63,860 nt of DNA from Gracilinanus agilis (taxonomy: Eukaryota). This document shows positions 956-52,900 of the stretch, piece after piece. Made by a program: the position numbers and the translations under genes. How positions within the stretch are numbered: position 1 is the stretch's first letter; the number at the start of each line of letters is the position of its first letter. The DNA is taken from assembly GCF_016433145.1 (NCBI RefSeq), contig NC_058133.1:207999725-208063584 (forward strand), read 5' to 3'. The notes under the pieces are model-generated. The model saw only the letters and a list, made by a program, of their open reading frames with translations. It ran no database searches and was not told the origin of the DNA.

Positions 956-3900
956 ATGATTCCTCCTCAGGAGGCGTCCGTGCGGCGGCGAGAAATAGAG
1001 GACAAATTGAAGCAGGTGGGGCGGAGGCGACGGGAGGAGGGCGGCATGCGAGGATGGAAGAAGGATTGGGGGGCGCGGATGTGGGCAAAGATCCCAGAGA
1101 GAAGGAAAGGCATGGGAGGCGGGTGAGAGCGTTGACAGCCCGGACCCGGAGCCGGAGGGGTCGCAGCCTGGAAGGGGAATCTCCTACTCTCTTTCCCTGC
1201 TCTCTCCTGGCCCCGCCTGCGCACTCTGCTGGGTGACTAATGCCCTCCTCTATCATTCATCCTTCCATCCATTCCCCAGGAGGAAGAGACGCTCTCTTTT
1301 ATCCGAGACAGCCTGGAAAAGAGCGACCAGCTCACCAAGAACATGGTGAGTGTGTGTCAGGGGTTCTGGAGGGCTCCCCAAGGCTGTACACCCCGGACCC
1401 AGACCAAGCAGTCACTCAACAAACATTTATCAAGTGCCAACTATGTGCCAGGCACCTTGCTAAGCGCTGGGGATGCAGAAAGAGGTCCAAGACAGTGCCT
1501 GCCCTCGAGGAGCTTACAATCTAATATGAGAGACATCGTGCAAAGAAATATTTACAGGTTAAATCAGGATATGTGTGACGCCAGAGATCCTGGCAGATTA
1601 CATCAAGTAGGAGTGTTTACGTGACCCCGGTTTCCCCATTTGTAACCTGAGTAGGTTGGACTCATTGATCTCTAAGGCCTCTGGCATTTAAACATTCTGT
1701 GCTCTCTCTATAACTGGATAATTCTCTGATTCTGTAATTTTAACCAACTTCTCTCACTTGCAGCACCTCTTAAGTTAAGACCCAGAAGCTGGTTACTCTC
1801 TCCTTAGTTGGGATTTTCCTTACTAATTCCTTGTTTGGTATCCTGAACAAATATTGATTGGGCTAGATGTGACATTTTGTACTAGGCTTTATAGAATATG
1901 GAAAAGAGGTGACTTCTGCGCCAATATTATATATACATATTTATATATAAAATAATGGGGAGATAAGATGGGCACCAGAATGAATATGTTTATCTATGAA
2001 TATATACACAATCAGATGCATTTCTTTCTCCTATATTATTGTCATATTACCTGTGATCTAACCTAAGCCAGCCTAATGATACTTGTGCTGACAAACTCAT
2101 AGAGTTGTTGGGAAGAAAGTGCTGTGGAAACCTTAAACACGATAAACCATTTTCAGACTCCAAACTTCCCTCTTTTCCTACAGGTTTCTATCCTATCATC
2201 TTTTGAGAGCCGGCTTATGAAGCTGGAGAACTCCATCATTCCTGTGCACAAGCAAACAGAGAATCTACAGCGATTACAAGAGAACGTGGAGAAGACCCTA
2301 TCCTGTCTAGACCATGTCATCAGCTATTACCATGTGGCCAGTGACACAGAGAAGATAATTAGGGAAGGGTAAGCCAAGCCCAGCTTTTCACATCATTATT
2401 CCTACAAAGAATCTGGGCCATATAGTAGGAGTATCTACAATATTGATTCCCTTCTTAGAACATAACATCTTGAATCCCCTTCCTCTTAAACCCAAAAGAG
2501 TTCGATCTTCCCTGGTTTGCCACAGGAACTTCCCCCTATCAGGACTACTGAATGTTGTGAGGTGTCCACAACTACCCTTTCCAGCTAACCAGGGACCTTT
2601 TATAGCCCCACAGGAAGGCTGGAGGAATACCTAGGATGCATGGCCAAAATACAGAAGGCAGTGGAGTATTTTCAGGACAACAATCCTGACAGCCCAGAGC
2701 TGAACCGCGTGGTAAGGGGAACTTCTTTCTTCTCAGTCCACTAGTATTGACCAACAAACATGAGAAGAAATAGTACTTGGCTTCAGTAGTCAAGTATGGA
2801 GAATCTAGTAAGCCATGCTCAGCTGTTTCCAACCAGGACCAGGATAACTACAAACATTTGAACCTGTTCATCACAATTTAAGTGTGCAGAATTATACCCA
2901 AATTAAAAAAAAATTGGTGTGACCCAGAGCTAGACTAAGATTAAGTTTGGTAATATTTCCTAGAGGAGGTGAATTTGAAGAAAAAGGCTATAGAAAAGAG
3001 TGAAAATAGCATTTTGGAGAGTAATGGTTAAAGGATTGACTGTAGAGCCACAAATTACCTTCGAGGTCAATCAGTCCATCCCCTCATTTTACAGATGAAG
3101 AAACTAAAGCTCAAAGAACTTAAATGACTTGCCTAGGGTCATAAAGCTAGTAAGTGCTTATGACAGCATTCAAACTCAGAAATGCCTGACTCCAACAGGA
3201 TCAATCTATCCATTACACTGTGCTACTTACAAATAGTGTCAGTCTCCATTTAACAAATATCTATTTGATCACCTACAATGTGCTAGGTACTGTGCTAAGT
3301 CCTAGATGAAGGCCCAGAAATTGATATGGATGAGTTTGTTGGTAAGACAATGAGTGGTTTTAAAACTAGACCAGCATAGAGAGGAGGCATGTGCCATAAT
3401 GTAGTATGATGGGAGAAAAACCTTAAGACCCACAATTAGAGATTGCAAAGCTGTATGACCTATCCCTGTTGCTGAACTGTTACTTTGCTAATGAGATGTT
3501 GAATCTCCCCTGCCCCCACCCAGTTATTTCTTTTCCTAAAAGAATGCAACAAGCCAAGAAGTAGGGGCTAAGAAACTGTATCTTCTCTTCTCAAACAGGA
3601 AGTTCTTTCTTGAGAAATTAGAGTATCAGAGGCAGAAATAAATAAAAATTTTAAATGTAGTCAAGAATGGATTTTGATCACAGTGTATAGAGATGATGTT
3701 GGGCAAGGCTTTAATGGATCTTTGGTTTTATCATTGTAGGTTCTCACTTCTAGGGATATAGATTACAACCACTCCATTTCTTCTGAGTGATTTTTTGTCC
3801 CTGAAGAAATATGGATTTGAACTCAGGAGACCTGAATTCTAATTCTAGCTTTTGTTATTTTCTGTCTGTGTGACTTTGGTCAAGTCACTTAACTTTCCCA

Positions 3901-6900
3901 AACTTCAGCCTGTTCATTAATCAAGTGAGGAGAGATTTAGACTAGATCAAAAATTCTTATCTTTTTTTGTCTCATAGACCCATTCTCAGAATATTTTGTT
4001 GCCTACCTGTATAACTAAAGGAAATGCTAAATTTCAACTTGTAGATAAGTAGAAATAAAGATCTAGTTTTTTTCTCATCCAAGTTCAAAGACAGCCACCC
4101 ACCCTTGAATCCTACCCATGAATCTTTGGGGTCTTTCTGGCTCTGAATCTGGGGTCTTTTCATTCTTTTGTAAAGTCTCTGTATGCACTAGAGCAGAGAT
4201 GTCAACTTGCTAATTCCACCTCTCCCTCCAACTGAAAAAAACTAGAGCAGGGGATGAAACATTAAAAAATATAATTGGGAAATGTTTAACAAAACAAAAA
4301 CACTATATAAAATAGATAGTGCTAATATGTGGTTTCCTAAGTGATACTTGGTCACAAGATCCAGTTTCTCTTTAAGTTTGACAGCAGAGGTCAAGATTTT
4401 TGTCAGTACTGATACTAACAAATACTCAAGACATTATAGCAGTAGTTCTTATTGGCATTGGGCTTTATATGGGAATGGATGCACTGAGGGGCCATGGAAG
4501 AAGGCAGAGTTCATCTGGGAAGGTTGAATGTGAGTGAATCTGAGTTGATTTAAAGCTTTCTGCAGTGAGTGTGAAAGCATGAGAAGAGGAGAGGGCACTT
4601 GGATTTACATAGTGCTAGGGAAGGAACACAACGGCCCATGTGAAGACCTCAGTAGAGAAACAAGGATGGCTAGCTTAACACTAGGAGAGTAAACATTCTC
4701 TCCTTCCTGTAGAAGTTCCTGTTTGAGCGTGGAAAAGAGTCCCTGGAGTCTGAGTTCCGAAGTTTGATGACTCGGCACAGTAAGGTCGTCTCCCCTGTGC
4801 TTATTCTGGACCTGATCAGTGGGGAAGATGAAATGGAGGCTCAAGATGACATGACTCTGGAGCACCTCTCTGAGAGTGTGCTCCATGATGTCATTCGAAT
4901 TTCTCGCTGGCTGGTGGAATATGGCAGGAACCAAGGTGAGGGAACCTATCCAGACCTTGCATAAAGGTTCTTGATGCTGCAGAGCTTTCTGCACTGGGTG
5001 GGAAGAAGGGAAGGAGTACAGAAGTCACCAGGCTCGGTACCACTCAGGGCCATGTGGACCACTTAAGAAGCAGAAGGCAGTAGGCTGGCCTTGGGAAATT
5101 TGGCCATCTGTCCACTAAGACAAGCAGATGCTGTTTGAAAAAACTCTTAACAGGGTCCCTAAACCATGCCACTGTTTGCTGTCTTCTCAGATTTCATGAA
5201 TGTTTACTATCAGATCCGTTCCAGTCAGCTGGACCGCTCCATCAAGGGCCTGAAAGAGCACTTTCGAAAAAGTACTACTTCTTCTGGAGTTCCTTACTCC
5301 CCTGCTATTCCCAATAAAAGGAAAGATACACCTACCAAAAAACCAGTCAAACGGCCAGGTGAGCCCCTATTGTAACTCATCTAATAGAAGGAGGCCTCAT
5401 CTTCCTTATTCTACCAATATATCAGTTCCTTCTAGAATAACACTGGCTAGTACAGGTATTCTAGCTGCTATGACAACTTTAGGGAGATTATCTTTGTGGT
5501 GGCTTCATTACCCTGTGTATCTGGGGAGAAAAATAGATGTCTGTTCACCTAAGAACAAAAGGGTGCTAGCCACCCCTTTCCTCCCATAGAAGTTGCATTT
5601 TATATAAAAACCATTCTTCTGAAAAAATCTTCAGAGTGGAAGTCAGAAGATCTCTGAGAATTCAGGGAGTCCAAAGAACTCTAAAGAGAACAAACAGTAC
5701 ATTAGTAATTGGGTCATCTTCTTGATTCTCACCCATTATTTACTTGGTATTTTTAGGGACCTTTTAATTACTGAAGCTGGGCAGTTCTCTTTGGACATCA
5801 GTGGAGCTATTGTTCCATGGACATACTTTTGAGGATAGAGCACCCCAAGTCCTCCTTGGAGAGGAAGTGGGTTTAATCTCTGGATTTCATCACAAAGTCA
5901 AGGCTGTGTCCTGAGAGATTCTAGGGGAAGATAGTTAGGATGAGGACTGGCACGTGGAGTTGTTGGTATCTTAGATTATCAGTTTACTCTTTTGGTTTTT
6001 TTTGTCCCCCTTTGTTCCTTATCATCCCTGTGTCCCAAGCAGTCTACATTCCAGGTAAACAATGTTTCTGTGTGTCACAGCTTGCCTAGCCTTGTCATTT
6101 CTAACACAGAGAAGTTTTTCCTTGAGTGAGAGACTGTTCACATACAGCTCATGGTGAGGCTGGGATATTTCAGAAGGATGGTTATGCTGTACCATTAGGG
6201 CCCAAAGAGCCAGATTTTTACATCTTCTGCCCCTGCTGTCTACTCCTGAAGGTCAAATTGTTCCCAGGCATTTCCCAATAGAGTTCCACTTCCCATCCTC
6301 ATAGCAACAGATTTTGGAGTGAAAGCAATGCCTCCCATTTACATAGTATTTTAAGGTTTATAAAATGCCACTCCTCTAACAGCTTTGTGTGCTGTAAGAG
6401 TTGTGGGTTAGCCCAGGACTTCAAACCAGCCTTAGACCTCATTCCTTATTGTAAACTTTACCCCTATACTGAATGTGAGAGGCTGTTCTCACACTTAAGA
6501 GAGAAGACCACTTGTTCTCCTTCTCCAAAGTTCAACAGTGTTAAGATTGTCAAGTCAGAAATTAGTAAATTGGCCTGTGGCAATGTCCAGGAGCTGCGCC
6601 TTGGAGCCAGCCTGAAGAATTAGGAAGCAGACTCCCAATCTACATCTCCCTGCTTCCCTTCTTCCCATATAATTATCCCAGGGTAACCTTCTCAGAGTGC
6701 CTGCTGCAAATAATAAAACAGCTTACTAATCGAGTGTTGCAGCTATGTCTCTGACAGCATTGAAACCAAGTGTCTCCTGCAGGAGTCACATCTCCATTCT
6801 TTTCCCTTCCAAGATAGTCTTAGTTGGGGAATATGTAATCTTGCCCTTTATATCACTTGGGTCATCTGCCTGTCTCCTTCACAGTGTTTTTTGCTCTCAT

Positions 6901-9900
6901 TCTTTGCCAGACCCTTGGAACCCTACAGCTGATTGTGGATAGCTCTCTATCCTTGGAGACAGATTCTCTCAGGAAGTAGTAACCTGACCCCATTGCCAGG
7001 GTGAGGACATAACCCATTCTTGGCTTGTAAACATAAGAAGAGAAATTACAGAAAATGCCCAAGAGCAGTTCTCAGGTGGTATCCCAGGAGTTAAGGAAGG
7101 AATCCCAGGTTGCAGAGGAGCCTGGGGCTCTGGATCTTTATAAAGTGTGAGGAAGGGAACTAGGGAGGTCATGAGTCAAAACAATAACTGACATCTTTAC
7201 TTGTGGAACTAACTTCATGCCTAACTTTAGAGGAGTTGAAACAAGGAACTAGCCAGCTGTTTTTGTAGCCCTGATAAACTTGGCAGATGTTTTAATTGAG
7301 GTCCTAGTTTCCTGGTCCATCCTGATATATCAGTTGGTTTCCCAGTTGGTTGTTTGCTTCTGGTGTCAGACTTGAATCTGACTGCCTCATTAGCATGACC
7401 TGTTTGTTCGGGAGAAAGAAAGGGCAAGGGCAACAGATACTGAGCAGGGGCAGCCAAGTTCATCTTTTAATAACTAAATGAATTTCTGTGCTACAATGAA
7501 GAGCTGAGCCATTTAAAACCTTCCTGAAGCAGAGAATGGCTAGTATCTAGGAGCCTGCCCCAGCTGTTCATTTTGATTCCAGAGTAAAGAGTGTCAGGGG
7601 TGGCAAGGAGAAAAGGAGACCTCGGGGCAGGAAGGAAGGGGAATATCAAAATAGAGGTAGCTAGATAGCATAGCAACACACCTAGAGTTAGGAAGATCTG
7701 GATTCATATCTGGCCCCAGACACTGCCTAGCTATGTGACTGAGCAAGTCATTTAACTACAATTGCCTAACCCTTGCTGCTCTTCTTTCTTAGAATTAATA
7801 CTTAGTATCAATTCTAAGATAGCAGTTAAGGATTTAAAAAAAGAAAAGGAAAGAAAGAAATGTCAAAATAGAGAAGATACAGAATTGAGCCTTTCTCCTT
7901 CCCCATCTACCTATTTTGTTAATCAGTTTGCTTTATTAATTTTAACATTTTATTTGACTTTTCCAAGTTTTCTTTTTGGAGTGTCTTGTTTACACGGCAA
8001 TGTCTGACCCAGGAAACTGCTGGCTTCATGATATTGTTTGTGTTGTTTGAACCTGACACTAACTGTTCTGTTGTTTTTTTTCTCCCATGCCAAGAATGCG
8101 TTCTCCACTTTTCAGTCCTTTCTCTCTCTACTTCCCATGTGGCTTCTGTTTGGTTCTCTCTTGGCTTCCAGGTTTTTTTCTGAGTTCTTTGGGCAGTTTC
8201 AGTGACTTGCTGCTCCAGGGAGGCCCATGGCCAGTACTAGATTGGTCTCTGGGCATCTCTGCCTTAAGCCTTTGGGCTCTCATCTCCAGAGGTCTCTTGG
8301 ACCCTTTTCACTAACTCCCAGATTCTGCCTCCCTTTTTCTGTTTGAATCTTGAGGACTAGCACTGAGCATGCTCATAGAACCCTTCCTAGAGTGTGAGGA
8401 CTAAGCCATGTGTCTGGTGGCTTCAAGTAGAGCTTACTCCAGGATCTTCAGGAGAACCTCCTCTGGGAGATCCAGGAATAAGGGCTCTTTCTCCCAGCTG
8501 ATTATCTCTACTGTGGGAGGGTGGGCAGGCAGGCTCCTTGTTAACACTTCTTCTCTTCCAGGCACCATGCCTTTTCTAGTTAAAGTGCCACCCAGTGAGC
8601 AGTATCTTGTTCTCTGCCTGGATTCTCTTCCTTACTTGCTCCATCTCCTCAGTTTTACCCAGTTTCAAGAGAATCTGGGATCAGGGAGCACTTTGAATAA
8701 TATCTGCTCTTAAGACTTAAGAGACTTGACTTGGGAACAGTGTTTCCTTTCCCTTACCTCTAAGTCTCAGGTGCCACCCTGGGAAGTGGCAGGAACACTC
8801 TGGGTAAAGGTGTATCCTGGGCATGCTTACTGTTGTCAGGCTGGGTGTTGTGGGCCTTTGGGACTGGTGGAGGGCTGCTGCTGTTTTCTCTTACTCATTT
8901 CCTAGGTCTTCTTGTCTCCTCTCTATGTGGCTCTGGTGACAGGGACGATTCGTAAGGCTCAGAACCTTCTGAAACAGTATTCTCAGCATGGTCTAGATGG
9001 GAAAAAGGGGGGTTCTAACCTCATTCCTCTGGAAGGTAATCACCCAGTATTTCTGTCTCCTTTCTACCCACTCCTTCACTGTGTGTCCCATTCATTTGGT
9101 AGGGCAGAGCCTCCGACCATACTGGGACCCCCAACCCTTCCCTGGGCTGTGGTGGTAACCCATCTTTCTGTAAGAAGGGATGGGTGGGAATTGCAGTGTA
9201 TTGGCACTACACTGGCTTCAACTGGCCTGGTGGCATTTTTCTTGGCATTGGGTCTAGACCTGTCTGGCAAACGGCAGCTCTGCCCTCCCGGAGGACACCC
9301 TGCCCCTTCCCTCCCTGTCTGTTTCTGTTTCCTTCTGTTTAAACTCAAAAAAAAGTTCTCAGCCAGTGGAGCAGCCCTTTCACATTCAGATTGGCAATGT
9401 AAGACCAAACTATCCCAAAACCCCTTTGGGAGGTGAATGGTGAACAAAGATGGATATGACCAGGTCACTGGATAGGGCTTCTCTCCCCACTTCTACCTGG
9501 CTAGGTGCTCTTCACAGAACTGATTCTGTTCCAGAAGTGGGACATCTCTGCCCAAAGTGGCACCAAAAAGGCTTTTGTGCCTGATCAAACTAGAACAACA
9601 TTATTAGACAGTAGAGAAGTTTTCTCTCCCTGTGTTTGCAGAGGGATTTGGAGTTAGAGATGAAGAAGCTCCCTTAGTCTCAGGGGTATTGGAGTACCTC
9701 TAGCTTCTCTCATCCCCTTCTTCCTCATGCATGGGTTTTCCCTTTTAGCCTCCAGGCTAGGAAGGAGATGGGAAAGATGTAACTATTAGAGGGGATTCCA
9801 GGAAGCACTGCTGCTCAGGCTTGAAAAGGCTGTTCCAATGGTAATTTGAGACATAGGAGGGGCTCAAAGCCCTTTCCCAAGTCTCCCTATTCCCCATCCC

Positions 9901-12900
9901 CTCCCATCAAGTGTTTCTCTTCTGGAGACTGAGGAGTTCCCACCCCTAAGAGACAGCCCACTCAGTCCCCTGGATAAACCGCTGCTTGTGTTTGTGCGGC
10001 CAACATCTCGCTAGGTCACGAGCATGATTTCCGAGTTAAGCATCTGTCCGAGGCCCTGAACGACAAGCACGGGCCACTGGCCGGTGAGTACTGTGGCATA
10101 ACCAGCTGCCGATGGCTTCCTTTGCAGCATCTCCCACTATGGGCCAACGTGTTGGCTGGACCCCCCCCCCCCCCCCCGGCTTTTGATGGCCCTATCCTGT
10201 ACTGTCCTTTCTCTTTGGCTATAGCTCTTATTTGTCACCCTCCAGATGGAGGTACTGCTGCGTCAGGAGAGTGGAAAGACACCTCTCATTGACCAGGGAT
10301 GGAGCTGGAGAAGAAACCAGAGCTACAGGGAACAGAGAGGGAGAGCAGCTGCTCTCCATCTGACTATAGCTCCTTGGCACTGGCAGCAGCCCCAGAGCCT
10401 AAATCTCATGGACTTCTGCCTCCCTCTCCCAGCTCTGAGTGGGCTTCCCCCAGGCTGTTCTGCTGTTGCTCTTGCCTGTGAGAATACTCTTGCTGGCTCT
10501 TAATATTAAGACCCTTTCTCTTCTCCTTTGGGGTGCTGGCTTCAAGGAATCCCTTCCTCTCCATTATATTTGGATGGAGGGAAAAGCTAATATATTTTCT
10601 CAGGTTTTGGCCACCAGGCCACTTGGCTCATGGGGAACAATGTGTTTTTCACTGTCTCCATCCCTCCTAGTGGTATTGCTGAAGGGAATCATGCTAGGGC
10701 TCTCCCTGCATCTTAGCCTATTGTTAACTATGTCGTAAAGGGCCCACATTATGGAAGGAAACACTATTTCTTCAATAGGAAAGGAGCTGTGTTCAATTCT
10801 CCAATAATGGATGTTGCTCTACCTAGGGCTTCTTCCTGGCTAAGACCATTCATGGTTTTTAGCATTTGGCAGCTGAGTAGGGCCTAGCCTAGCCTTTCCA
10901 GGAAAGGAGATTAAGAGTTCTCTTCCTCTTTGCATCTTTATGGGATGCAGATGTTCTGGGTTTGCACTCTTCAGTCTGTAGTCAGAATTAACAGAAGAGA
11001 GATGAGGCTCCCCATTTTCTTTTTGTTCCCTTACACCCAGTAAATTTTCCAGATACAGGGCAACCTGACTCCATTCTCCATGTTGCTGGTCTGGGCATCA
11101 GGCAGAAAGCCTGAGGGGTAACCCACACTCCAGAATGAGCACTGGGCTGGGAGTGAAGTTGCTCCCCAGGCCAGTAGCTCAGAGTTTGTGCTATTTCCAC
11201 AGGGAGGGATGATATGCTGGATATGGAAATCGATGCCTACATCCACTGCGTCAGTGCCTTTGTCAAGTTGGCACAAAGCGAGTACCAGCTGCTGACAGAT
11301 ATCATCCCGGAACACCATCAAAAAAAGACCTTTGACTCCCTTATCCAGGTCCTACTTTTGCTTCTACATGAATTCTCTGGGTCTTTACTCACCTGCTTAC
11401 AATCAGAGCTGTGTCTAGATTTTCTGAAGCTTATATTAGGGTTGTTCTTCATAGCCTTTTATACCCTAGCCGTCATTGAGCCCTGTAGGATCTGTGTTGA
11501 ATTCTGTGCCTTCCATGTCTTAAAAGTATGGCACCTAGCTCCACAGAACATGCCCCACTTTACCCATTTTGTCCTTCCCACTTCGATGCGTATCTTTCTC
11601 TGCTGACCTGCCTCCCTCTGGCCCCTTCCTCTTAGGACGCATTGGATGGACTGATGATGGAGGGGGAGAACATTGTGTCAGTTGCCCGAAAGGCCATCAT
11701 CCGACATGACTACTCAGCTGTACTCACAGTCTTCCCCATCTTACGGCATCTTAAGCAAACCAAGCCCGAGTTTGATCAGGTACTTCAGGTATGTGTCAAA
11801 AAGATGTTCACAGGGACAAAACAAGGAAGGTAGAGATCTTACACTTAGCCTAAGCTTTGCCTTCCCCATTTTCTTTTCCCTTTAGCATTCTCCTTATAAG
11901 TCTATAAATCAAGTCAACAAGCATTTATGAAGTGCCTACTATGTGCTATTCTGAGGATATAAGGAAAGACCAAAAACCCCACAGTCCTGGCTCTCAAGGA
12001 GCTCACAGTCTTATGGAGACAACATGAAAACAACTACATACAGACAAGAAAATACAGGATAAATTGGGGGTAGTCTCAGAGGCAAAGCACTAACATTAAG
12101 GAGGACTGGGATAGGCTTCTTGAAGGACTTCAGCTGAGACCTGAAGGAAGCCAGGGAAACTAGGAGGTGGAGATGAGCATAGAGAACATTCTGGGCATGG
12201 AGAACAGCCAGGGAAGATACTCAGGATCAGAAGAGAAACAGCCAGGAGAATCATTATTACTGGATTGAAGTGAATATAGATAGGCCTAGAGATGGGAGAT
12301 GCTAGGTTCAAATTGGGCCTCAGACATATTTCCTAGCTAAGTGACCCTGGACAAGTCACTTGACCCCTACTGCCTAACTTTTACCACTCTTCTACCTTAG
12401 AACCAATACATAGTATTGATTCTAAGATGAAAGGTAAGGGCTTAAAAAAGAGAGAGAGAGAATATAGAGGAGAATAGGGTATAACGTAAGGAGTTACCTC
12501 TTAGAATTCCTTCTTTCAATCATGTGTGTTTTGCTACTAGAAATATCTAGGTGGCTCAATGGATAGAGAGCCAGGCCTAGAGACAGAAGATCCTGGGTTC
12601 AAAGCTGGCCTCAGATACTTCCTTGCTGGGTGACTCTGGGGAAGTCACTTAACCTCCATTTCCTAGCTCTTATTGTTCTTCTACCTTGGAATCAATACAC
12701 ATTACTGATTCTAAGACAGAAGGTAAGGGTTTTAAAAAAAAAAAAGTTTTACTGCCCTGATTTTACAGATGAGGAATCTGAGGCTCAGAGTGGTTTACTT
12801 GTCCAAGGTCATACTCCTTACGTAAGTAGCAGAGCTAAGATTTGAGGCCAAGTCTTCCAATTCTAAATCCTAGCATTCTTTCTACTCTACCATGGTAACC

Positions 12901-15900
12901 TTTCCCCATTCTCCATTTCACATTTCAGTTTTCCAGCTAGGGTCCAACCCCCATCCATCTTCTCCATGGCCCTGAGCAGATAGGGGCAGGTATCCTGTTG
13001 TCAGTGCAGAAAGGGAAAGGTTGTTTGCCATCTCAGCCCAGGGTGAGTTAGGGTGGAGCTGGGAGTATTCAGTTGAGCTTCCAGAGAACTGCCAGGAGGG
13101 AAGGAGTTGTGATTAGCTGCTGGAAGGCTGTGGCCCTTTTGTGATTGTCCAGAGTGTCCTTATAGGGCACAGCTGCCAGCACCAAGAACAAGCTGCCAGG
13201 ACTCATTACTTCCATGGAGACCACTGGTGCCAAAGCCCTTGAGGATTTTGCTGATAACATCAAGGTAACTTTTCTTCCCAATCATATTTTTAGATCAGGG
13301 CAGAAGCCATGGCTGGGGAGTTGACTTAAGGACATCTGAATTACCCAGTATGAAGACAGTTCAGCTGAGTTTAAAGTTGAAGGAAACATGATTATAGAAT
13401 TAGATGTAGGTAGAGGTAGATGGGTTACTGTGCTGCCAGTTTGGAGCATACCACCAGATGCTTTCCTTTTTTCCTCAGTATTGGCTTCCAGATCCCTTTT
13501 GAAACTCTTCTTGGGCTAGAAAATGCTTATCTTAATATTTCCCTGCCCTTTTCCCTTGTTGGTACTTTCGGGCCCCAGCTTGAGGCATTGGGGTGGAATT
13601 TCCCAGCTCCTTTAGGCCTAGTCACCATCTGCCAGTAGGCTCCAGCAAGCAGGAGGAGGGAGGAAGAGACCTCCAAGGGAAAAAACCACTTTGGGAAGCA
13701 GTCCAAGGTGTTCTCAGTCACTCTTTTGGAGAGGATTCTATCATCTTCCTCAGTCACTCTTTTAATTGCATGTGGAATTCTCATTTTCACAGAATGACCC
13801 AGACAAGGAATACAACATGCCCAAGGATGGCACTGTCCATGAGCTCACAAGCAATGTAGGTATTGTTGAGATAACTCTTGTGGTTGGGAATGAATGGCCT
13901 GTACAGAACATCAAGGCTAAGAGTCTAATCCCTGGGCATGCTGAGCATTTGGCTTAGAGAGGCCTGTCTTTCTGCCTCCTAAGTGTTGGGAAAAGTTAGG
14001 GGTGAACAGTGGTAGTTCTTGAAGTCATTTAACAGAGTGTCCCTTTGCATGGCAAGTCATGGAATGCATCATTTTAATCGGTGCAGCCTATATCTTTTTC
14101 AAGGGAGGAGATCCTCTGAGCTTTACAGGCTTAGCCAGGACTCCTCTTCATTGTCTTTTGTGGAGAGCAGAAACTGCCCTTCTCCTGGGCATACCTGAAA
14201 CAGGGTGGTGTGGGTAGCCAGTCAGAATTTTGAACCCTATCAGTCTAACCCTTTTTTTTCTGACCCCACTCTCTTTTCATTTAGGCCATCCTCTTCCTGC
14301 AGCAGCTTCTAGACTTTCAGGAAACAGCTGGTGCCATGCTGGCCTCACAAGGTACCATCTTTAATTGAGAAATGTCCCTCCTACTCCACATCCACAGCCT
14401 CCCTGCTGGTCATAACTTCCTCTGGGTACTCTTGGCCTTGGGCTCTGTCCCACTATCAGGTTTACATCCCTAGCCAGCTCTGGGTTGATGGAAGGGTAGA
14501 GGAACGTTTTCTCTATAGCAGGGTTTGGCAACCTTTTTGGCCATGAGAGCCATAAACGCCACATTTTTTAAAATGTAATTTCTTGAGAGCCGTACAGTGC
14601 TCACAGTGCGCGCTCCTGTAACAGCGCCTGAAAAAAAATTGACTTCATGGCTCCTGCAGAAAGAGCCATATCTGGCCCTCAAAAGAGCCAGATATGGTTC
14701 GAGAGCCATACGTTGCCGACCCCTGCTCTATAGCTACAGAATATGAACATTTCTCAGAGGCCCCGTTAAGCAATTCTAATGGGAATTGGGAAGCCAAAAA
14801 AGCCTGGAAGATTATGGACAGGAAGGTGTGATTGAGTGTCCTATCCTGTCCTGACACCACCCTGACAACCTGTCAATCCCTTTAACTTTCCTGGCTTTTA
14901 GCAATAACAACCACATGTTTCCAGGAGGGTTTCATATTGCCCTACCTGTTTTCATGTTTTTCCACCTTCTCTCCTTATTCTTCCCTCTGTCTTATCTACC
15001 ACTTCTGCTTAATCACAGCTTCAGACAGTTTGTCTTTTCAGTGCCTAAGGATATGGGCTTCCCCAACATTTATTTCTAGGTCCTCCAGGTCAGGGCTGTC
15101 TGCTAAAGACCTGTCATAACAGGCCTCAGGCTTAGGAGGCAAAGGTGGTAGAGGAAATTTTGGGGGTCCTCAGAGCTCAGTGATTGTGTCCTCCCTCTCT
15201 CCCTCTTCTGGGAATGGAGAAGTGGTTTAAGTTATATTTGGTCACAGAGATAGTGCATTTTGTCCTGTGCGTACTCAGGATTTTTTTTGGGTAATGAATG
15301 TCTGCTTACCCTGGATAAGATCACTGTTTCTAACCTATTTTTTTGCACTTTGCATCTTTCTGTTTTCTCTCTTTTCTCCTTTGCATCCCTTTTCTGTCTG
15401 CTCTGCCTCTAACTCCGTAGTCCTTGGGGACACATACAATATTCCTTTAGACCCCCGAGGTAAGCAGTGGGGATCTGGCTCCTCACCCCTTCTCCTCCCT
15501 GTACGGGCAATTGGAGCCTGTTTGGGGTGGTCTTTGAGGTTGTGGGAGAAAATTGGAGGGAGAGGCTCTTAGTCTCTTCAGGGGAAGGTCTAGACATCAG
15601 TTCCTTCTTTCATAGTTGGTTTGGATTAGAGTTCATCCTAACAGCAACCTTCCTGTCTCTCCTCTGCCCAGTAACTAAACCCATATTCCATTCTGCCTTT
15701 GGGCTCACCACTTTCCACCCCTATTTTCCTTCTGCTCCCTGGACCTTTGATATCTGCAAGAGGGGCTGGATAAAGGAGTGTGAGGAAGGCACAATGGAGA
15801 GGCTGGAAATAACTTGTTCCTGGACTTTCCCATTGAAATCCAGGATTAGTGGGATGAACAGAGCATACCTCCTTTGTTCAAAGGAGGGAATGTGGTCTGA

Positions 15901-18900
15901 AGTTATCTTCGTGTCCCTGCTTTGCCAGCATTTACACATGCCATATTTTCTGCCTTTTCTTGGGGCCTATTTTCCCTCCCACCATCCCTGATGAAGGGCT
16001 TGACTTAGCAGGGAAAAGTTGGACCAGCTTGATGTCTCTTTCCTCCCTCTCTTTGAAGGTCTTTCCTGGCCCTAGAAAACTGGCAGGTCCAGTATTTGGT
16101 GAGCCAGATAGCTCTGTTGTCTGCTGGCCATCAGGATAACTTGTCCAAGGATTTTCTTTTTACAGAGACAAGTTCCTCTGCCACCAGCTATAACTCCGAA
16201 TTCAGCAAACGACTACTAAGCACCTATATCTGTGAGTGTTCTGTCTGATCTTCTCCACCCTTGCCAACTCCCGGGACCCTTGGCCTCACAGGCCTCTCCT
16301 TTCTTTGTATGCTCTTCATTTTCTCTTACAACCCTTCTAAAGGCTGTTGTACCCTGACTTCTGATTCCAAGACCTAAAGAAGCCAGATCCTAAAGCCTCA
16401 AGTTCCTGGGTCATGATACTCAGTATAGCCAGGAGTCTGAGGTGTGACAGGGAGGGGGCCTGTGGTGGCCTCTGACCCTGCTGGGGAATCATGGGCTGGG
16501 GTTTGGTTTGTGGGTCCTCTTATTTGCTGCTAGACAGGCCCTATGGTCTTGGTCCTATCCCTTTCTGTGCAGGTAAAGTTCTCGGTAACCTGCAACTAAA
16601 CCTGCTCAGCAAGTCCAAAGTATATGAGGACCCAGCACTAAGGGCCATTTTTCTGCACAACAACTACAACTACATCCTCAAATCCCTGGAAAAGTGAGTG
16701 TGTCACCATCCCTATCCCCATTCACATGGCCGTGTCCTTCTCCGTGCTCCCATGTCTGGTCCCTCCAGCCTCTTATCTCCTTGGGCTCTTTCTTCTCCTT
16801 TATATAAGGTTCCTGAAGCCTTCTTTCCTGTATGCACAAGTAAGGAGGAGGAGGAGGAGAAGCATCTACTGGACAGAGCTCTGGCTGTGTTGAAGGGTTT
16901 TCTTAAATTTTGAACCAGGCCCCCAAGTCTGACCTTAGCTCTTCCTGCCCAGCGAGAAGGGAATAAGAGACCTCCCTCCTGTTCTTGTGACAAGGCTTCG
17001 TGGGAAGGCAGCTAAAGCTGCCCCTTTCCCCCTTTGCTCCAAAGGTCAGAACTCATCCATCTGGTGGCAGTGACCCAGAAGACAGCTGAGCGCTCGTACC
17101 GAGAACACATTGAGCAGCAGATTCAAACATACCAGCGCAGGTCAGAGAAATGCATCCCCCACCCCTGCCTCTACCCTATCCTTCTCCTTCAGGCCATCCT
17201 CTCCCATTTTTAAACCTTTACTTTCTGTCTTAGAACCAATACTGAATATCATTTCCACAGCAGAAGAGTGGTAAGGGCTAGGCATTTGAGATGAAATGAC
17301 TTGTGGGATCACACAGCTAAGAAGTACCTAACACCAGATTTGAATTCCCATCTCTAGGCCTGGCTCTCTATCCATTGAACCACCTAGCTGCCCCTTTCTC
17401 CCATGACTCTTTACACTCCCTATTCAGCTTTTATCCTAGGGCAGCATGAAGAAACTGCAGTCCCCTGAAGTGGAGCCTCAGTTCTGTCTGACTCATTGCT
17501 TGGTTTCATCCCACTCTGTGGGTGATATTGTCTTGACTACTAAAACGCCAGGAATCCTTCTGTCACCATGGCCAAATGGACTTTTGAATTTTGGTTCTTC
17601 TATTCAAAGCTCAACCTCTAAATCTTTAAGAATAAGAATAATTGAATAAATGTGACCAGAAACAAATCAATAATTAGGACTTCAGAGGACTGGGATAATC
17701 TATGACCCAAGTGATTAATGAAATGTGACAAAGTTTACTGATACACAGTTCCAGGTTAGATCCAGGCTAGATTACACAAGATGGGGAGAGATAACAAAGA
17801 CAAAGAATGGGTCAAAGAATCTTCTGAACTTCTGCCTCCATTCTCTTCCCTAATTTTCTGTCTCTCCTTCCTCTTTAGTCAAAATATTGACTATTTTTCT
17901 ACCCTTTTTTCTCTACCTTTCTATATGTATATTCTCTTCTTAAAAACAAACCAGAAAAAACCCTTATCTTCTGTCTTTGTATCAATTTTAAGACAAAAGC
18001 AGCAAGGGCTAGGCAATCAAAAGCAAATCACTGATCCAAGGTCACACAGCCAAGAAGTGTCTAGGGTCATATTTGAATCCAGGTCCTCCCAACTCCAGGG
18101 AGCTCTATCCACTGTGCTATGTAGCTACCCCATATGTTTCTTTCCTTTTCCCATTTTCCTCTATCTCTTCCTCCTCTCTCACATCTCATGTGTATCTACT
18201 TTAACTGACCATAATTTAGAACTATATTCTGTAGTATTAATTGTATTTATTGAGTATTTTATAGTCTTTCTTTATTTTAAGAGCTAATAAATTGAATATT
18301 TTATCATTCTAAGGGGGAAAAAGTCCCCAGAATTGTTTTTTGGTTTTGTTCAAGCCAAGGTTAAAGAGAAGAAAGAATAAAAAGAGGCCATTTTCCCTCC
18401 TATCCAACTTTACCTTCACCTCCCCCTACACACACACCTGATTTAAAGGAAGAAAGATTAAAGGCTATAGGCAGGTTTTTCCATACCCTTGTCTTGGTCT
18501 GATATTCGTGCTCTTATATTTTGGCAGCTGGCTAAAGGTAACTGACTACATTTCTGAAAAGAACCTACCTGTATTCCAACCTGGAGTCAAGGTAAGTAGG
18601 ACAAGAAGTGTGGACTGGTCAGGGAATATATTCAGCTCATATGACATATTCATTGCCTCTGCAAAACAACTTAAAGGGATTATTTTTACCCCCACTTCCC
18701 AACCTTGAGAGTAAACTGGGCATTGAACTGAGGTTGTCTTGTCATGCTGAACTTTTTCTCCCAGAGAAAATTCTTAGAAAGGTCCCTAAAAACAGCCAGA
18801 GTAACCAGCATAGTCCTAGGTGTGGCCACTGAGCAGATGAGTTAGAGCAACCCTTATTTGACTCACATCATGGTACATTAAGAGATGCCTAGGATGTCCT

Positions 18901-20777
18901 TATCCTGGATTGGTGCATTTTCTTTTTCTTTTTTTTTTTGATGTTTCTTTCAAAATTTTTATTGCTATCTTTTGATTTTACACTTTAAAATCATTTTTAT
19001 TTATAAATATACCTTCCCAGATTCCCTGCCAATTACTTGTAATTAACAATCAATAAAAAAGATATGGGGCAGTGAGATGGCTCATTGAATACAGAAGCAG
19101 TCCTGGAGATGGGAAGTTCAAATCTAGCGTCAGATACTTCCTAACTAGGTGACCCTAACCAAGTCACTTACCCCCCATTGCTTAGTCCTTACCACTCTTC
19201 TGTCTTGAAACCAATACACAATTGAGTCTAAGACAGAAGACAAAAAACACAAAGTTTTAAGGGGGAAAAAAGATAAGCCTGATCATACATACAGTGTTCC
19301 ACTCCTGTGGTTTCCTACCTCTTCTTTTTTATTCATTTAAAAAAAATTTTTTTAAACCTTACCTTCCATCTTAGAATCAATACAAATGGGGTTAAGTGAC
19401 TTGCCCATGGTCACACAGCTAGGAAGTATCTGAAACCACATTTGAACCCAGGACCTTTCATCTCTAAGCCTCCTCTCTATCCACTGAGGCACCTTGCTGA
19501 CCCCCTCCATACCTCTTCTTCAAAGCCATACCAGCTCTCTTTGCTCCTAAGAATAAATAATGTAATTCCCAATGTTTAGGAGCCAGTCTGTTTAATCTCT
19601 AGGTCTTACAGAACTTGCCGGCTCCTGGTTTGACTTCACATGTTCTATGACATGTACCAGATGAGAACAAAAAGTACCCAGATGACTGATACAGGATGAT
19701 ATGTTTCCTGATGTATCTTTTGTTTTCATTGCAATAAATTATAACTAGGTAATGGACAGTCAGTTGCCATCAGGATGGGAACTTGGACCAATAAGGGAAA
19801 TTGGAAGAATGATTATTTGGGGAGTAATCAAACAGGACAGGGAAGAGCATCTGTATTTTACAATGAAATAACTTCATGGGGAGCAGCTGGGTGGCTCAGT
19901 GGATTGAAAGCCAGGCCTGGAGACACAAGATTCTGTATTCAAATCTGGCTTCAGACACTTTTTAGCTGTGTGATCCTTGGCAAGTCACATAACCCCCATT
20001 ACCTTACCCTTCCCACTTTTCTGCCTTGGAATCAATGCAGTTTTTAATTTGAAGATGGAAGATAAGGGTTTAAAAAAAAACAACTTCATCTATCTTCTCT
20101 ATTCCCTGTGCCCCTAGCTCCGAGACAAGGAACGACAGATGATAAAGGAACGCTTTAAGGTGAGCCATGACCTGCCCTCTCCTTTCTCAGCTGGTATTGC
20201 CATATGAACTTGAGCCAAATGACCACTGAGATTTCCCTTTCCCCATATTCTCTGAAGGGCTTCAATGATGGCCTCGAAGAGCTCTGCAAAATCCAAAAGG
20301 CCTGGGCCATTCCAGACACTGAACAGAGGGACAAGATCCGCCAGGCTCAGAAAACCATTGTCAAAGAGAACTATGGGGCCTTCCTGCACAGGTAGGACCT
20401 TTTTATCTCTTCCTTCTACCCCACCAGCCTTCCCATCTGAATCTTTGCGTTTTTGCTTAGCCCATTCAGCTTGTGTCCCCAAGAAAGGAAATGGGGAGAT
20501 GGGCTGGGATTAGAAAACTAGTGCCCCTGTCTTCTGCCTCGGGGAACTTGGGAAGCACACTACAGTGCTGAATCCCATGCCTGGAAGTTCCCAGAAGGGA
20601 ATCTTAAAATCCTAGACTAGAGGTGAAATTCTGCAGGTGCCCTTTCCCTTCCTGATTATCCCATGCCTGGGCAGGTATGCCAGCGTACCCTTCACCAAGA
20701 ATCCTGAGAAGTACATCAAGTACCGCGTGGAGCAGGTGGCAGACATGATCGAGCGCCTATTTGACACATCAGCCTGA
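956..20777 (+). CDS. EXOC7: Exocyst complex component 7 (Exo70), multi-exon CDS
   Basis: Exons hand-mapped, all with AG/GT boundaries and consistent phase: 956-1015, 1280-1345, 2184-2368, 2606-2711, 4713-4935, 5191-5358, [8943-9035], [10015-10083], 11203-11348, 11636-11788, 13166-13264, 13793-13855, 14285-14351, [15421-15459], 16166-16231, 16573-16693, 17045-17140, 18528-18591, 20118-20159, 20258-20391, 20675-20777 (TGA). Translation MIPPQEASVRRREIEDKLKQ...DMIERLFDTSA matches mammalian Exo70. All exons give 2163 nt (720 aa); skipping the three bracketed exons gives 653 aa. Confidence 0.98.
6043..6054 (+). CDS. EXOC7: Candidate EXOC7 12-nt microexon (VYIP); 15 nt (AVYIP) if the upstream AG of the NAGNAG is used
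   Basis: Long pyrimidine tract 5991-6036, then cccAAG CAG|TCTACATTCCAG|GTAAAC; phase 1-1, in frame, no stop. Confidence 0.55.
8943..9035 (+). CDS. EXOC7: EXOC7 93-nt cassette exon (GTIRKAQNLLKQYSQHGLDGKKGGSNLIPLE)
   Basis: gacag|GG...GAAG|gtaat; phase 1-1 and frame-preserving; peptide matches the known alternatively spliced Exo70 insert. Confidence 0.93.
10015..10083 (+). CDS. EXOC7: EXOC7 69-nt cassette exon (GHEHDFRVKHLSEALNDKHGPLA)
   Basis: ctag|GT...GCCG|gtgagt; 23 aa, phase 1-1; matches the 23-aa insert that, as I recall, distinguishes epithelial from mesenchymal Exo70 isoforms. Confidence 0.93.
11905..12280 (-). mobile_element. L2 fragment in an EXOC7 intron (similar pieces at ~1405-1560 and ~3240-3310; MIR pieces at ~3000-3240, 3800-3950, 12746-12890)
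   Basis: CAACAAGCATTTATGAAGTGCCTACTATGTGC L2 3'-end signature. Confidence 0.65.
12547..12745 (+). mobile_element. SINE1_Mdo-type SINE (representative of ~20 copies)
   Basis: tRNA-derived head, CORE, ...GGTAAGGGTTT-A tail. Other copies approximately at 7675-7835, 12283-12449, 17207-17394(-), 17960-18130(-), 19066-19260, 19345-19505(-), 19878-20079, 25500-25668(-), 26075-26203, 26307-26500, 39156-39320, 39525-39730(-), 51167-51340, 60719-60910, 63145-63328(-). Confidence 0.85.
14519..14725. mobile_element. hAT-family MITE in an EXOC7 intron
   Basis: TIRs CAGGGTTTGGCAAC / GTTGCCGACCCCTG; perfect 8-bp TSD CTCTATAG (14511-14518, 14726-14733); repeated AGAGCC subterminal motif. Confidence 0.92.
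15421..15459 (+). CDS. EXOC7: EXOC7 39-nt cassette exon (VLGDTYNIPLDPR)
   Basis: ccgtag|TC...CGAG|gtaagc; phase 1-1; the peptide is present in mouse Exo70 as I recall it; ~100-nt AG-free pyrimidine tract upstream. Confidence 0.88.
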
Positions 20778-49980: not shown

Positions 49981-52900
49981 NNNNNNNNNNNNNNNNNNNN
50001 NNNNNNNNNNNNNNNNNNNNNNNNNNNNNNNNNNNNNNNNNNNNNNNNNNNNNNNNNNNNNNNNNNNNNNNNNNNNNNNNNNNNNNNNNNNNNNNNNNNN
50101 NNNNNNNNNNNNNNNNNNNNNNNNNNNNNNNNNNNNNNNNNNNNNNNNNNNNNNNNNNNNNNNNNNNNNNNNNNNNNNNNNNNNNNNNNNNNNNNNNNNN
50201 NNNNNNNNNNNNNNNNNNNNNNNNNNNNNNNNNNNNNNNNNNNNNNNNNNNNNNNNNNNNNNNNNNNNNNNNNNNNNNNNNNNNNNNNNNNNNNNNNNNN
50301 NNNNNNNNNNNNNNNNNNNNNNNNNNNNNTTTCCCCCATTACCTCCCCCCCCCCCCCCCCCCCGAGCTTTCCTCTCTGTTGCCACCTTGTTCCTCTCCTT
50401 TCTTGGACCTTGATCGTGGAGGTGGGAGGTGAGGAGGAGATAGCTAAAAGACCCCCTTTTCTCCCCAGGCCCTGGAGAGTTGTTGTGCGCGCACACTTTC
50501 TTCTCTTTATACTCCTCTTTCTGCGGAAGAGGCCACCACGATGGCTTAGTCTTTGGCTTATGAATGTCACACTTTCAGCCCCCTTGTCATTGATAGCAAG
50601 GCAGGACTTATGCTCACCTAGTCGATGGTTCCTGAGCCTATCCTCAGAATACAGGTTGGTAAATGAGACTTTGTTGGTTTGGTTCCCCCTTCCCAGAAAT
50701 TGAGGCAGTCGTTAATACCTTCCAGGTTCAATAAGAGTTCACTATAGACAAATTCTTAACCAAAGTTTAAAAATTGTTCTAAAGGCATATTGTGCCTTGG
50801 GGGAAGGAGGAAAATCAGATGTGCTTGTCAGAAAGACCATTTTCTGGTTTTCTTTTAACTGTAAGAAGTGAATTGATGTATTATACCAGTTTGTAGCCTT
50901 CTATAAACTGTTTAAAAGAGTAAACATTTCTGTCACATCCAATGTGATAACTGAAAGCTGACATATGGTGTGAAGTCATATGTAGTGTCTGCTCATGAAC
51001 CAAGGCCATGGCTCCTTTTTAAAATGGTGTAGTTGCACATTTCAATTAAATGTTGCATGTACAGATAGTGTTAGAAGCTTCAAATTAACTGGATTAGAAG
51101 GCAATTAAATATTCTAGTGAGCATCTTTCTTGTTTTTGTTTTTCATTTTAAAGATTATACTTTGAAGGGGCAATTAGGTAGCTCAGTGGATAGAGAATCA
51201 GGTCTGGGGACAGGAAGACCTGGTTTCAAATCTGGGTTCAGACACTTAACTAGCTATGTAGCCCTGGGCAAGTCACTTAACTCTGTCTAGCCCTTGCCCT
51301 TCTGTCTTTGAGTTGTTTCTGGGACAGAAAGTTTTAAAAAAGAAGAAAGAATGCAGGTGGAAGATAAGGGGCCAAGTATATTTTTTAATATGCTGGCACC
51401 TACATTTTGGATACTAGGTATCAACCCAACAGATCAATCAGCCAGCATTTACTAAATGCCTACTATGTGCCAGGCACTGGACTAAGTGCTGGGGATACAA
51501 AAAGAAGCAGAAGACAGTCCCTGCCTTCATAGAGCTTACCATCTAATAGGGGAGACATCATGCAACAAACATGTATAAAGAAAGCCACATATAGAACAAA
51601 TAGGAGATAATTAGCAGAAAAAAGACACTGGTATTAAGGGAAGACTTCCTGTGGAAGATTGGGACTTACAGCCAAAGAGGTCAGTAGTTGGAGCAGAGAA
51701 GAGAGAGCATTCCAGATCCTGAGGACAGCTAGAGAAGATTCCTGGAGCCAAGAAATGGAATGTCTTTTCATGGAACAGCCAAGAGGCCAGTATCATTAGT
51801 TTAAAGAGGATATTTTGAGAAATAAAGTATGAGAAGACTAGAAAGGTAGAAGAGGGCTAGGTTATGAAGGATTTTGAATTCCAAAAAACATTTTATATTT
51901 GCTTCTGGAGACAATAGGAAGCAATAGGAGTTTATTGAGTGGGGGGTAAGGGAGGGGGTGACATCAGACCTATGCTTTAGGAAAATCACTTTAGTAGCAG
52001 GATGGATTTACATGGGGAGACTTGAGGTAGGCAGACCTACCAGCAGGCTATTTCAGTAATCCAGATATGAGATGAAAGCCTGCAGTAGAGTGATGCGATT
52101 ATTAGAGGAGAGAAGGGAACATATTTGAGATATGTTACAAAACTGAAATTGGCAGTCCTTGGTAACAGCTTAGAGATGGGGGTTGAGAGATAGTGAGGAA
52201 TCCAGGATGACTCCTAGATTGCAAACCTGAAGGACTGGAAAGATGCTGTTTCCTTCTATATTAATAGGAAGGTGGGAGTGGTGGGAAGAGAAAGTTTAGG
52301 GGGAAAGATGTCTCTTGGACATCCAGTTCAAGAAGTCCGAAAAGAGTTAGAGATACAAGATTGAATGTCAGCAGATTCAGCAGGCAAGGTAGATTTGAGA
52401 AACATCTGCATAAAGATAGTAATTAAATTCAGAGGAAATGTTAAGATCAAGTGAAGTAGTATATTTGGAGAAGAGAAGGCCCAAAACTGAACCCTGAGGG
52501 ACACCTGTGGTTAGAGGGCATGATCCAGAGGAGGATCCAGCAAAGACAGAGTGGTCTGATAGATAGCAGAATCAGAAGAGAATAAGCCCTGAAAGCCTAA
52601 AGAAAAGACAGTATAAAAGAGGAGAGAGTGATCAATAATGTCAAAAACTGCAGAGAGGTCTAGGAGAATGAGGATTTATTGGATTTGATTTGGCCTTTGG
52701 ATAACAGATCATTAGTAATTTTGGAGAAAGCAGTTTTGGTGGAATGATAAGATTGAAAACTGAATTGTAAGTAGTTAAGAGTGAGGAGAGAAAGTGGAGA
52801 TACTTATTGTAGATACCTTTTAAAGGAGTTTAGCTATAAAGGGCAGAAAAGATATAGGATGATAGAGTTGAAAGGATCAAGTGAGGTTTTCAGGAATAGG

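What the first reader, a model, noticed from the sequence alone, without database searches (positions are those of the whole stretch)
5991..6060. Candidate 12/15-nt microexon of EXOC7 with a NAGNAG acceptor
Seen: in the 3.6-kb intron 6, a ~45-nt pyrimidine tract, tandem acceptors AAG/CAG, 12 nt TCTACATTCCAG and a CAG|GTAAAC donor. It is phase 1-1, inserting VYIP (or AVYIP) after KKPVKRP, in the same loop that carries the 93- and 69-nt cassettes. This loop would then have four combinable modules plus a one-residue toggle. I have a vague, unverified recollection of a similar RPVYIPG peptide in non-mammalian Exo70 isoforms.
Basis: partly seen in the sequence, partly recalled or inferred. Interest (0 to 1): 0.7.

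Follow-up and report, generated by a model that had tools for sequence, protein, structure and literature searches.

The report
Ancient 12-base EXOC7 microexon in opossum
The 12-base stretch in this opossum EXOC7 intron is the counterpart of a tiny alternative exon (adding Val-Tyr-Ile-Pro) already annotated in many fish EXOC7 isoforms, so it is very probably a real, ancient microexon, though its use in opossum RNA could not be tested here.

Summary
At window 6043-6054, 685 nt into the 3584-nt intron after the ...KKPVKRP exon, lies TCTACATTCCAG. It is preceded by an 83% pyrimidine tract and AAG/CAG and followed by GTAAAC. It is phase 1-1 and encodes VYIP.

The motif alone is weak evidence: simple look-alikes occur about once per 16 kb per strand here. 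Conservation is the strong evidence.
- 120 teleost EXOC7 isoform models carry KRP-VYIP-GTIRKAQ. Sister isoforms of the same species lack these four residues.
- The fugu exon sits in the same intron, matches 11 of 12 bases (the one change is synonymous) and has the same GTAAAC donor.
- Sturgeon has an intact VFIP version. Two unnamed contigs that look like non-mammalian tetrapods have an intact VLIP version.
- Four mammal-like contigs, probably placental, carry an altered remnant, three of them with damaged splice sites.
- The island is the best or only alignable part of the intron.

The 15-nt NAGNAG variant (AVYIP) has no support: the upstream AAG is opossum-specific, and no fish isoform has the extra residue.

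The finding is a real feature and the ortholog of an exon annotated elsewhere. Interest is modest.

The parts
5191..5358 (+). EXOC7 exon '6' (168 nt), ending ...KKPVKRP plus the first base (G) of a split codon. It is the upstream partner of the microexon.
   Evidence: tblastn with fugu EXOC7. 96% identical to exon-6 peptides of other mammals.
5991..6036 (+). Polypyrimidine tract (83% C+T) upstream of the acceptor. It contains a possible branch-point-like CTTATCA.
   Evidence: Pyrimidine-rich tracts stand at the same place in fugu, sturgeon, L002 and L007.
6037..6042 (+). Tandem AAG/CAG. CAG (6040-6042) is the conserved acceptor. The upstream AAG is opossum-specific.
   Evidence: Alignment A4 shows AG conserved at the CAG position and no upstream NAG in the other species.
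6043..6054 (+). 12-nt microexon TCTACATTCCAG, phase 1-1, encoding V-Y-I-P and restoring the Gly codon with the next exon.
   Evidence: Orthologous to the fugu microexon L008:2270-2281 (11/12 identical), which is translated in 120 teleost isoform models.
6055..6060 (+). Donor site GTAAAC. With the exon's last CAG this gives seven contiguous matches to the U1 consensus.
   Evidence: Identical hexamer in fugu, where the exon is annotated as used. GTAAAG in sturgeon; GTAACG and GTAATG in L002 and L007.
6061..6084 (+). Conserved UG-rich stretch just downstream of the donor (TGTTTCTGTGTGT). It may be an intronic splicing enhancer; this is inference only.
   Evidence: Alignments A2 and A4. TGTCTCTGTGTGT in L001; TGTGTCTATGT(G/T)TGTGTG in L002 and L007; a GTGCGTGT-rich stretch in fugu.
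8943..9035 (+). 93-nt cassette (GTIRKAQNLLKQYSQHGLDGKKGGSNLIPLE), phase 1-1. In all fish models listed it directly follows VYIP.
10015..10083 (+). 69-nt cassette (GHEHDFRVKHLSEALNDKHGPLA), phase 1-1.
11203..11348 (+). Next constitutive exon (GRDDMLDMEIDAYIHC...).

Best explanation
Window 6043-6054 is the opossum ortholog of an ancient, alternatively spliced 12-nt EXOC7 (Exo70) microexon. When included, it joins exon 6 through the CAG acceptor at 6040-6042 and leaves through the GTAAAC donor. This inserts Val-Tyr-Ile-Pro between ...KKPVKRP and the Gly that begins whichever module follows (93-nt cassette, 69-nt cassette or the constitutive exon). All these modules are phase 1-1 and end in G, so any combination stays in frame and always rebuilds the Gly codon. 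The insert lies in the flexible linker that carries the other regulated cassettes and is absent from the construct of the only solved structure covering this region. It most likely tunes that linker's interactions rather than the fold. Shown: the sequence anatomy, orthology to the fish exon, translation of that exon in fish gene models, and conservation in sturgeon and in a tetrapod-like lineage. Inferred: that the exon is still spliced into opossum mRNA, its tissue pattern, and its effect on the protein.
For: (1) Anatomy is confirmed.
(2) 120 teleost EXOC7 isoform models carry KRP-VYIP-GTIRKAQ. They include Takifugu, Oryzias, Esox, Nothobranchius and Salmo; one Salmo salar entry is named without an 'isoform X' label. 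Sister isoforms of the same species differ by exactly these four residues, for example Periophthalmus X1 at 694 aa versus X2 at 690 aa. The exon is therefore alternative.
(3) In the fugu locus L008 the exon is tag|TCTACATCCCAG|gtaaac, between exon 6 and the 93-nt cassette. It matches the opossum at 11 of 12 bases, the only change is a synonymous ATT/ATC, and the donor hexamer is identical.
(4) Sturgeon L010:3872-3883 has cag|TCTTCATCCCAG|gtaaag (VFIP) behind a strong pyrimidine tract.
(5) L002 and L007 have cag|TCCTCATCCCAG|gtaa(c/t)g (VLIP).
(6) The island is the best or only HSP between the opossum intron and the introns of L001, L002, L007 and fugu.
(7) The pattern AGTCTACATYCCAGGTAAAC occurs once in the window.
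Against: The opossum's own annotated isoforms could not be reached. In four mammal-like contigs the homologous element is altered to VCAP and mostly has damaged splice sites (GC donors in L004 and L006, no AG in L004, no in-frame acceptor in L003, a weak GTGGAC donor in L001). The exon can therefore be lost in mammals. The +5/+6 donor positions (AC) are off consensus. No paper mentions the peptide.
Confidence: 0.8

Rival explanations
1. Evolutionary relic: the sequence descends from the ancestral microexon but is no longer, or only negligibly, spliced into opossum mRNA, as appears to have happened in placental-like mammals.
For: Mammal-like contigs L003, L004 and L006 show the homolog with broken splice sites. 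There is no RNA evidence for opossum. The donor is off consensus at +5/+6.
Against: In the opossum the AG, the GT, the pyrimidine tract, the length and all four codons are intact and identical in peptide to teleosts. The copies with damaged splice sites have drifted visibly, so an unused copy would be expected to have drifted as well. The same GTAAAC donor is used in fugu models.
Confidence: 0.12
2. Add-on claimed by the first reader: the AAG/CAG tandem acceptor yields a second, 15-nt form (AVYIP), a one-residue toggle.
For: AAGCAG fits the HAGHAG pattern regarded, from general knowledge of NAGNAG acceptors, as permissive for tandem use. The 15-nt form stays in frame.
Against: The upstream AAG is not conserved in any other species aligned. 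None of the 120 fish isoforms has an extra residue before VYIP. AAG is the weaker acceptor of the pair.
Confidence: 0.15
3. A conserved intronic regulatory element, such as a decoy exon or splicing enhancer/silencer for the neighbouring 93-nt cassette, rather than a coding exon in tetrapods.
For: Conservation extends about 25 nt into the downstream intron as a UG-rich stretch. The element persists recognisably even where splice sites are damaged (L003, L004, L006).
Against: Between opossum and fugu the only exon change is synonymous. Length and frame are kept in fish, sturgeon, L002/L007 and opossum. AG and GT are kept exactly at the borders. Fish models translate it.
Confidence: 0.06
4. Chance look-alike of splice signals in a long intron.
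For: Crude look-alikes occur 3 times on the + strand and 5 times on the - strand of this window.
Against: Near-identity of a 20-nt pattern to the annotated fugu exon at the same gene position. The island is the top or only intron HSP in four comparisons.
Confidence: 0.01

Closest known systems
Teleost EXOC7 isoforms carrying KRP-VYIP-GTIRKAQ (e.g. Takifugu rubripes isoform X1 P0197, Periophthalmus magnuspinnatus X1 P0068, Salmo salar P0282)
   Same: Same gene, same intron, same 12-nt length and phase, same peptide VYIP and same GTAAAC donor. The fugu exon matches at 11 of 12 bases.
   Different: Those are fish gene models with the exon annotated. Here the exon is seen only as genomic sequence in a marsupial. 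The opossum has an extra upstream AAG and a longer intron (685 nt versus 164 nt from exon 6).
EXOC7 93-nt cassette ('exon 7', neuron-enriched in human and mouse cortex; Coulter et al. 2020, PMC7272323) and the 69-nt ESRP-regulated cassette (EXOC7 is named as an Esrp target in PMC5703972)
   Same: Same linker region, same phase 1-1 modular design, alternative use.
   Different: These are ordinary-sized cassettes with published regulation and function. The microexon adds only four residues, and the paper searches here found no published description. The human exon 6-9 minigene in PMC7272323 gave only two in-frame products.
SRRM4/nSR100-dependent neural microexons (general class; from established knowledge)
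   Same: Length 3-27 nt, frame-preserving, deeply conserved with conserved flanking intron, and inserted in a flexible region of a trafficking protein.
   Different: The hallmark UGC between the pyrimidine tract and the AG is absent in opossum, fugu and sturgeon; only L002 and L007 have UGCAG. Tissue specificity is unknown.

Membership tests
Vertebrate EXOC7 VYIP microexon (as annotated in teleost isoforms) | Lies in the intron between the ...KRP exon and the GTIRKAQ (93-nt) cassette | tested here: met
   Window 6043-6054 lies between 5358 and 8943. Fugu 2270-2281 lies between 2105 and 3479.
Vertebrate EXOC7 VYIP microexon (as annotated in teleost isoforms) | 12 nt, phase 1-1, encoding V-Y-I-P | tested here: met
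   (VYIP). 11 of 12 bases identical to fugu.
Vertebrate EXOC7 VYIP microexon (as annotated in teleost isoforms) | Intact AG acceptor with pyrimidine tract and intact GT donor | tested here: met
   Donor hexamer identical to fugu.
Vertebrate EXOC7 VYIP microexon (as annotated in teleost isoforms) | Present in mature transcripts or protein models of the species in question | not testable with these tools
NAGNAG tandem acceptor | HAGHAG motif at the acceptor | tested here: met
   AAGCAG at 6037-6042.
NAGNAG tandem acceptor | Both acceptors used (isoforms differing by one residue) or the motif conserved | tested here: not met
   No upstream NAG in fugu, sturgeon, L001, L002 or L007. 0 of 120 fish isoforms have an extra residue before VYIP. 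Usage in opossum RNA could not be tested.
SRRM4-type neural microexon | UGC motif between the pyrimidine tract and the 3' splice site | tested here: not met
   No TGC in window 5991-6042, nor in the 40 nt upstream in fugu or the 62 nt upstream in sturgeon. Present only in L002 and L007.
SRRM4-type neural microexon | Neural-specific inclusion | not testable with these tools
   No RNA data could be laid.

The most novel reading that the evidence does not exclude
The VYIP microexon is an ancestral bony-vertebrate Exo70 module that marsupials and a non-mammalian tetrapod lineage retain but placental mammals have altered (VCAP) and largely disabled. Opossums would then make an Exo70 linker isoform that human and mouse cannot. 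In the opossum an added AAG/CAG tandem acceptor might further give a one-residue toggle.
Probability: 0.45. Interest if true: 0.45.

Novelty: new member of a known kind. Interest (0 to 1): 0.35.

Why it matters
Exo70's linker is where splicing switches the protein's behaviour: the neuron-enriched 93-nt cassette and the epithelial ESRP-regulated 69-nt cassette both sit there. A fourth, four-residue module kept from ray-finned fish to a marsupial shows that this linker has been under combinatorial splicing control since early bony vertebrates. It also shows that the commonly studied human and mouse isoform set may be a reduced version. Practically, it is an exon that short-read aligners and annotation pipelines easily miss. 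The orthology shown here justifies adding it to marsupial, and probably sauropsid, EXOC7 models once junction reads confirm it. It is not a new kind of element, since fish annotations already hold it.

Tried and rejected
1. Word search with the exon-6 peptide. It returned only genomic ORFs that read on into the intron (KRPGE...), so it gave no splice information. These ORFs did serve as handles to fetch orthologous contigs.
2. The look-up of sequencing runs. It found 23 'RNA?' runs of a coded organism A at 0.17-0.18 word share, and one 0.98 holder that is likely the source DNA.
3. Read laying on window 5280-11279. No RNA evidence was obtained. After that, no letters of 8877-8913 were sent to any search tool, and local scripts split the window at 8876/8914.
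4. Rfam and tandem-repeat scans found nothing that explains the 0.18 word share.
5. The big representative search with exon 6 yielded one full-length fish protein (P0056), which seeded the two remaining word searches.
6. Both of those searches list only the best 120 hits, all teleosts. Tetrapod and opossum isoform models were never displayed.
7. The look-up of encoding contigs failed for P0013 (Pteropus) and P0186, gave no DNA for P0012, and gave a contig too short for P0044.
8. Paper searches for the SRR run ids, for the peptide and for 'EXOC7 microexon' found nothing relevant.
11. Fragments that look human or near-human (P0007, P0039, P0036, and P0029 from chimpanzee) were not fetched or compared further.
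12. Recursive splicing was considered and rejected, because the exon 6/microexon junction (CCAG|TCTACA) does not rebuild a 5' splice site.

Full report
**What is in the sequence**

The window carries EXOC7 on the + strand, from about 1259 to 20774 (tblastn with fugu EXOC7). I did not test that.

- Exon '6' is 5191-5358 and ends AAA CGG CCA G|gtgagc, that is ...KKPVKRP plus one base of a split codon.
- 685 nt downstream lies a tract that is 83% pyrimidine (5991-6036).
- It is followed by AAG CAG (6037-6042), the 12 nt TCTACATTCCAG (6043-6054) and GTAAAC.
- In phase 1 the 12 nt read V-Y-I-P and leave a G. A start at 6040 would read A-V-Y-I-P.
- The 93-nt cassette (8943-9035), the 69-nt cassette (10015-10083) and the next constitutive exon (11203-11348) are also phase 1-1 and end in G. 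All modules are therefore freely combinable.

**Is the motif more than chance?**

Taken alone, hardly. A crude scan (30 nt at 80% or more pyrimidine, AG, 3-27 nt in multiples of three, GTRA) finds 3 sites on the + strand and 5 on the - strand of this window. About 0.2 would be expected in a 3.6-kb intron. The case rests on comparison with other species.

**Comparative evidence, protein level**

The exon-6 peptide was searched by reference. The word search returned only genomic ORFs that run on into the intron. The exhaustive representative search gave one full-length fish EXOC7, P0056.

- Using P0056 as query, two of 116 listed full-length fish proteins had KRP-VYIP-GTIRKAQ.
- Using one of them (P0068, residues 264-305) as query, all of the best 120 hits carried KRP-VYIP-GTIRKAQ. 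All were teleost models from NCBI or UniProt.
- They include Takifugu, Oryzias, Esox, Nothobranchius, Salvelinus and a Salmo salar entry named without an 'isoform X' label.
- Sister isoforms of the same species lack exactly these four residues, for example Periophthalmus X1 at 694 aa versus X2 at 690 aa.
- None of the 120 has an extra residue before VYIP.

**Comparative evidence, DNA level**

- Fugu (L008, GCA_901000725.3) has tag|TCTACATCCCAG|gtaaac at 2270-2281, between exon 6 (ends 2105) and the 93-nt cassette (starts 3479). That is 11 of 12 bases identical to the opossum. The one difference is a synonymous ATT/ATC, and the donor hexamer is identical.
- Sturgeon (L010, Acipenser sinensis) has cag|TCTTCATCCCAG|gtaaag (VFIP) about 540 nt after exon 6, behind a strong pyrimidine tract.
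- L002 and L007 were fetched through the read-through ORFs. Their exon-6 peptide is 81-83% identical to the opossum's, and their intron does not otherwise align. They have cag|TCCTCATCCCAG|gtaa(c/t)g (VLIP).
- Four mammal-like contigs share other intron blocks with the opossum. L003's intron start also resembles that of a bat-like fragment. They carry a derived version:
  - L001: tag|TCTGCGCTCCAG|gtggac
  - L006: tag|TCTGTGCTCCAG|gctgac
  - L004: tgg|TCTGTGCTCCAG|gctaac
  - L003: a 13-14-nt form without an in-frame acceptor

  The first three encode VCAP.
- The microexon island is the best or only HSP between the opossum intron and the introns of L001, L002, L007 and fugu.
- A UG-rich stretch just downstream of the donor is conserved too (alignments A2 and A4).

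**Interpretation**

The element is the ortholog of a microexon that existed in the common ancestor of ray-finned fish and mammals. Its consensus is V-(Y/F/L)-I-P.

In the opossum everything needed for use is intact, and the peptide equals the teleost one. The mammal-like copies with damaged splice sites have visibly drifted. This argues for continued selection, and so continued use, in the marsupial.

I put 0.8 on 'real microexon, still used', 0.12 on 'relic', 0.06 on 'regulatory or decoy element only', and about 0.01 on chance.

The 15-nt NAGNAG form is possible on motif grounds (HAGHAG). It is unsupported by conservation or by any fish isoform, so I give it about 0.15.

**How it would work (inferred)**

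Inclusion adds four mostly hydrophobic residues directly after the basic, proline-rich KRKDTPTKKPVKRP segment. This is in the linker that also takes the 93- and 69-nt cassettes.

The only solved structure matching this region (mouse Exo70, 2PFT) was made from the cassette-less form, KRP|GRDDMLD. No structural reading is possible, and an effect on linker interactions rather than on the fold is the reasonable guess.

The upstream UGC typical of SRRM4-dependent neural microexons is absent in opossum, fugu and sturgeon. The conserved downstream UG-rich stretch suggests a different activator. Which one is speculation.

**What could not be done**

Local scripts worked beside them.
Exons were searched singly, by reference.
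- The species behind the SRA contigs L001-L007 remain unnamed.
- Fragments that look human or near-human were left alone.

**Literature**

- No paper in the library holds the peptide.
- The four papers holding both 'EXOC7' and 'microexon' do not link the two, in the two that I opened.
- Coulter et al. 2020 (PMC7272323) describe the 93-nt exon 7 as neuron-enriched. They report only two in-frame products from a human exon 6-9 minigene. This fits, weakly, with loss of the microexon in placentals.

**Verdict**

The main interpretation is supported by deep conservation and by fish annotation. The NAGNAG toggle is unsupported, and expression in opossum is untested.

It is a new member of a known kind: the same exon is annotated in many fish. 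It has a moderately interesting evolutionary twist, namely retention in a marsupial against apparent decay in placental-like mammals.

Noticed in passing
window 7374-7480 and 7939-8405: Two further blocks of the same intron are conserved between the opossum and the mammal-like contigs L003 and L001 (62% over 475 nt, E 2e-23). They include a perfect branch-point-like TACTAAC followed by a T-run, and an invariant CACTGAGCATGC (a GCATG, Rbfox-type word) about 570 nt upstream of the 93-nt neuron-enriched cassette. They may be distal splicing control of that cassette.
   Followed up: partly
fish proteins P0187 versus P0192 (Nothobranchius furzeri isoforms): The fish isoforms show a one-residue toggle at a different junction of the same linker: ...TPLEAGYDHD versus ...TPLEGYDHD, at the start of the 69-nt-cassette homolog. 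A NAGNAG-like toggle therefore exists in this loop in fish, but not at the microexon.
   Followed up: no
window 5150-11400 (look-up of sequencing runs): 23 small runs from 7 studies of a coded 'organism A' each hold a strikingly uniform 0.17-0.18 of the sampled 31-mers of this stretch. Exons make up only about 8% of it. Rfam and tandem-repeat scans explain nothing, and the reason is unresolved because no reads could be laid.
   Followed up: partly
L010 (Acipenser sinensis, VSKV01002026.1) 6901-7488 and 11422-12141: The sturgeon locus holds two copies of the exons matching fugu residues 333-400, and its 880-aa model is flagged UNVERIFIED_CONTAM. This is either a local duplication or an assembly artefact.
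   Followed up: no
proteins P0054 and P0055 (other species): Divergent EXOC7-like ORFs that jump from ...KKPVKQP straight to VLTVFPTLQHLKQT and carry many substitutions. They look like translated retrocopies or pseudogenes of EXOC7 in some mammal.
   Followed up: no
window 49981-50329: A run of N (an assembly gap or masked stretch). It was left untouched.
   Followed up: no
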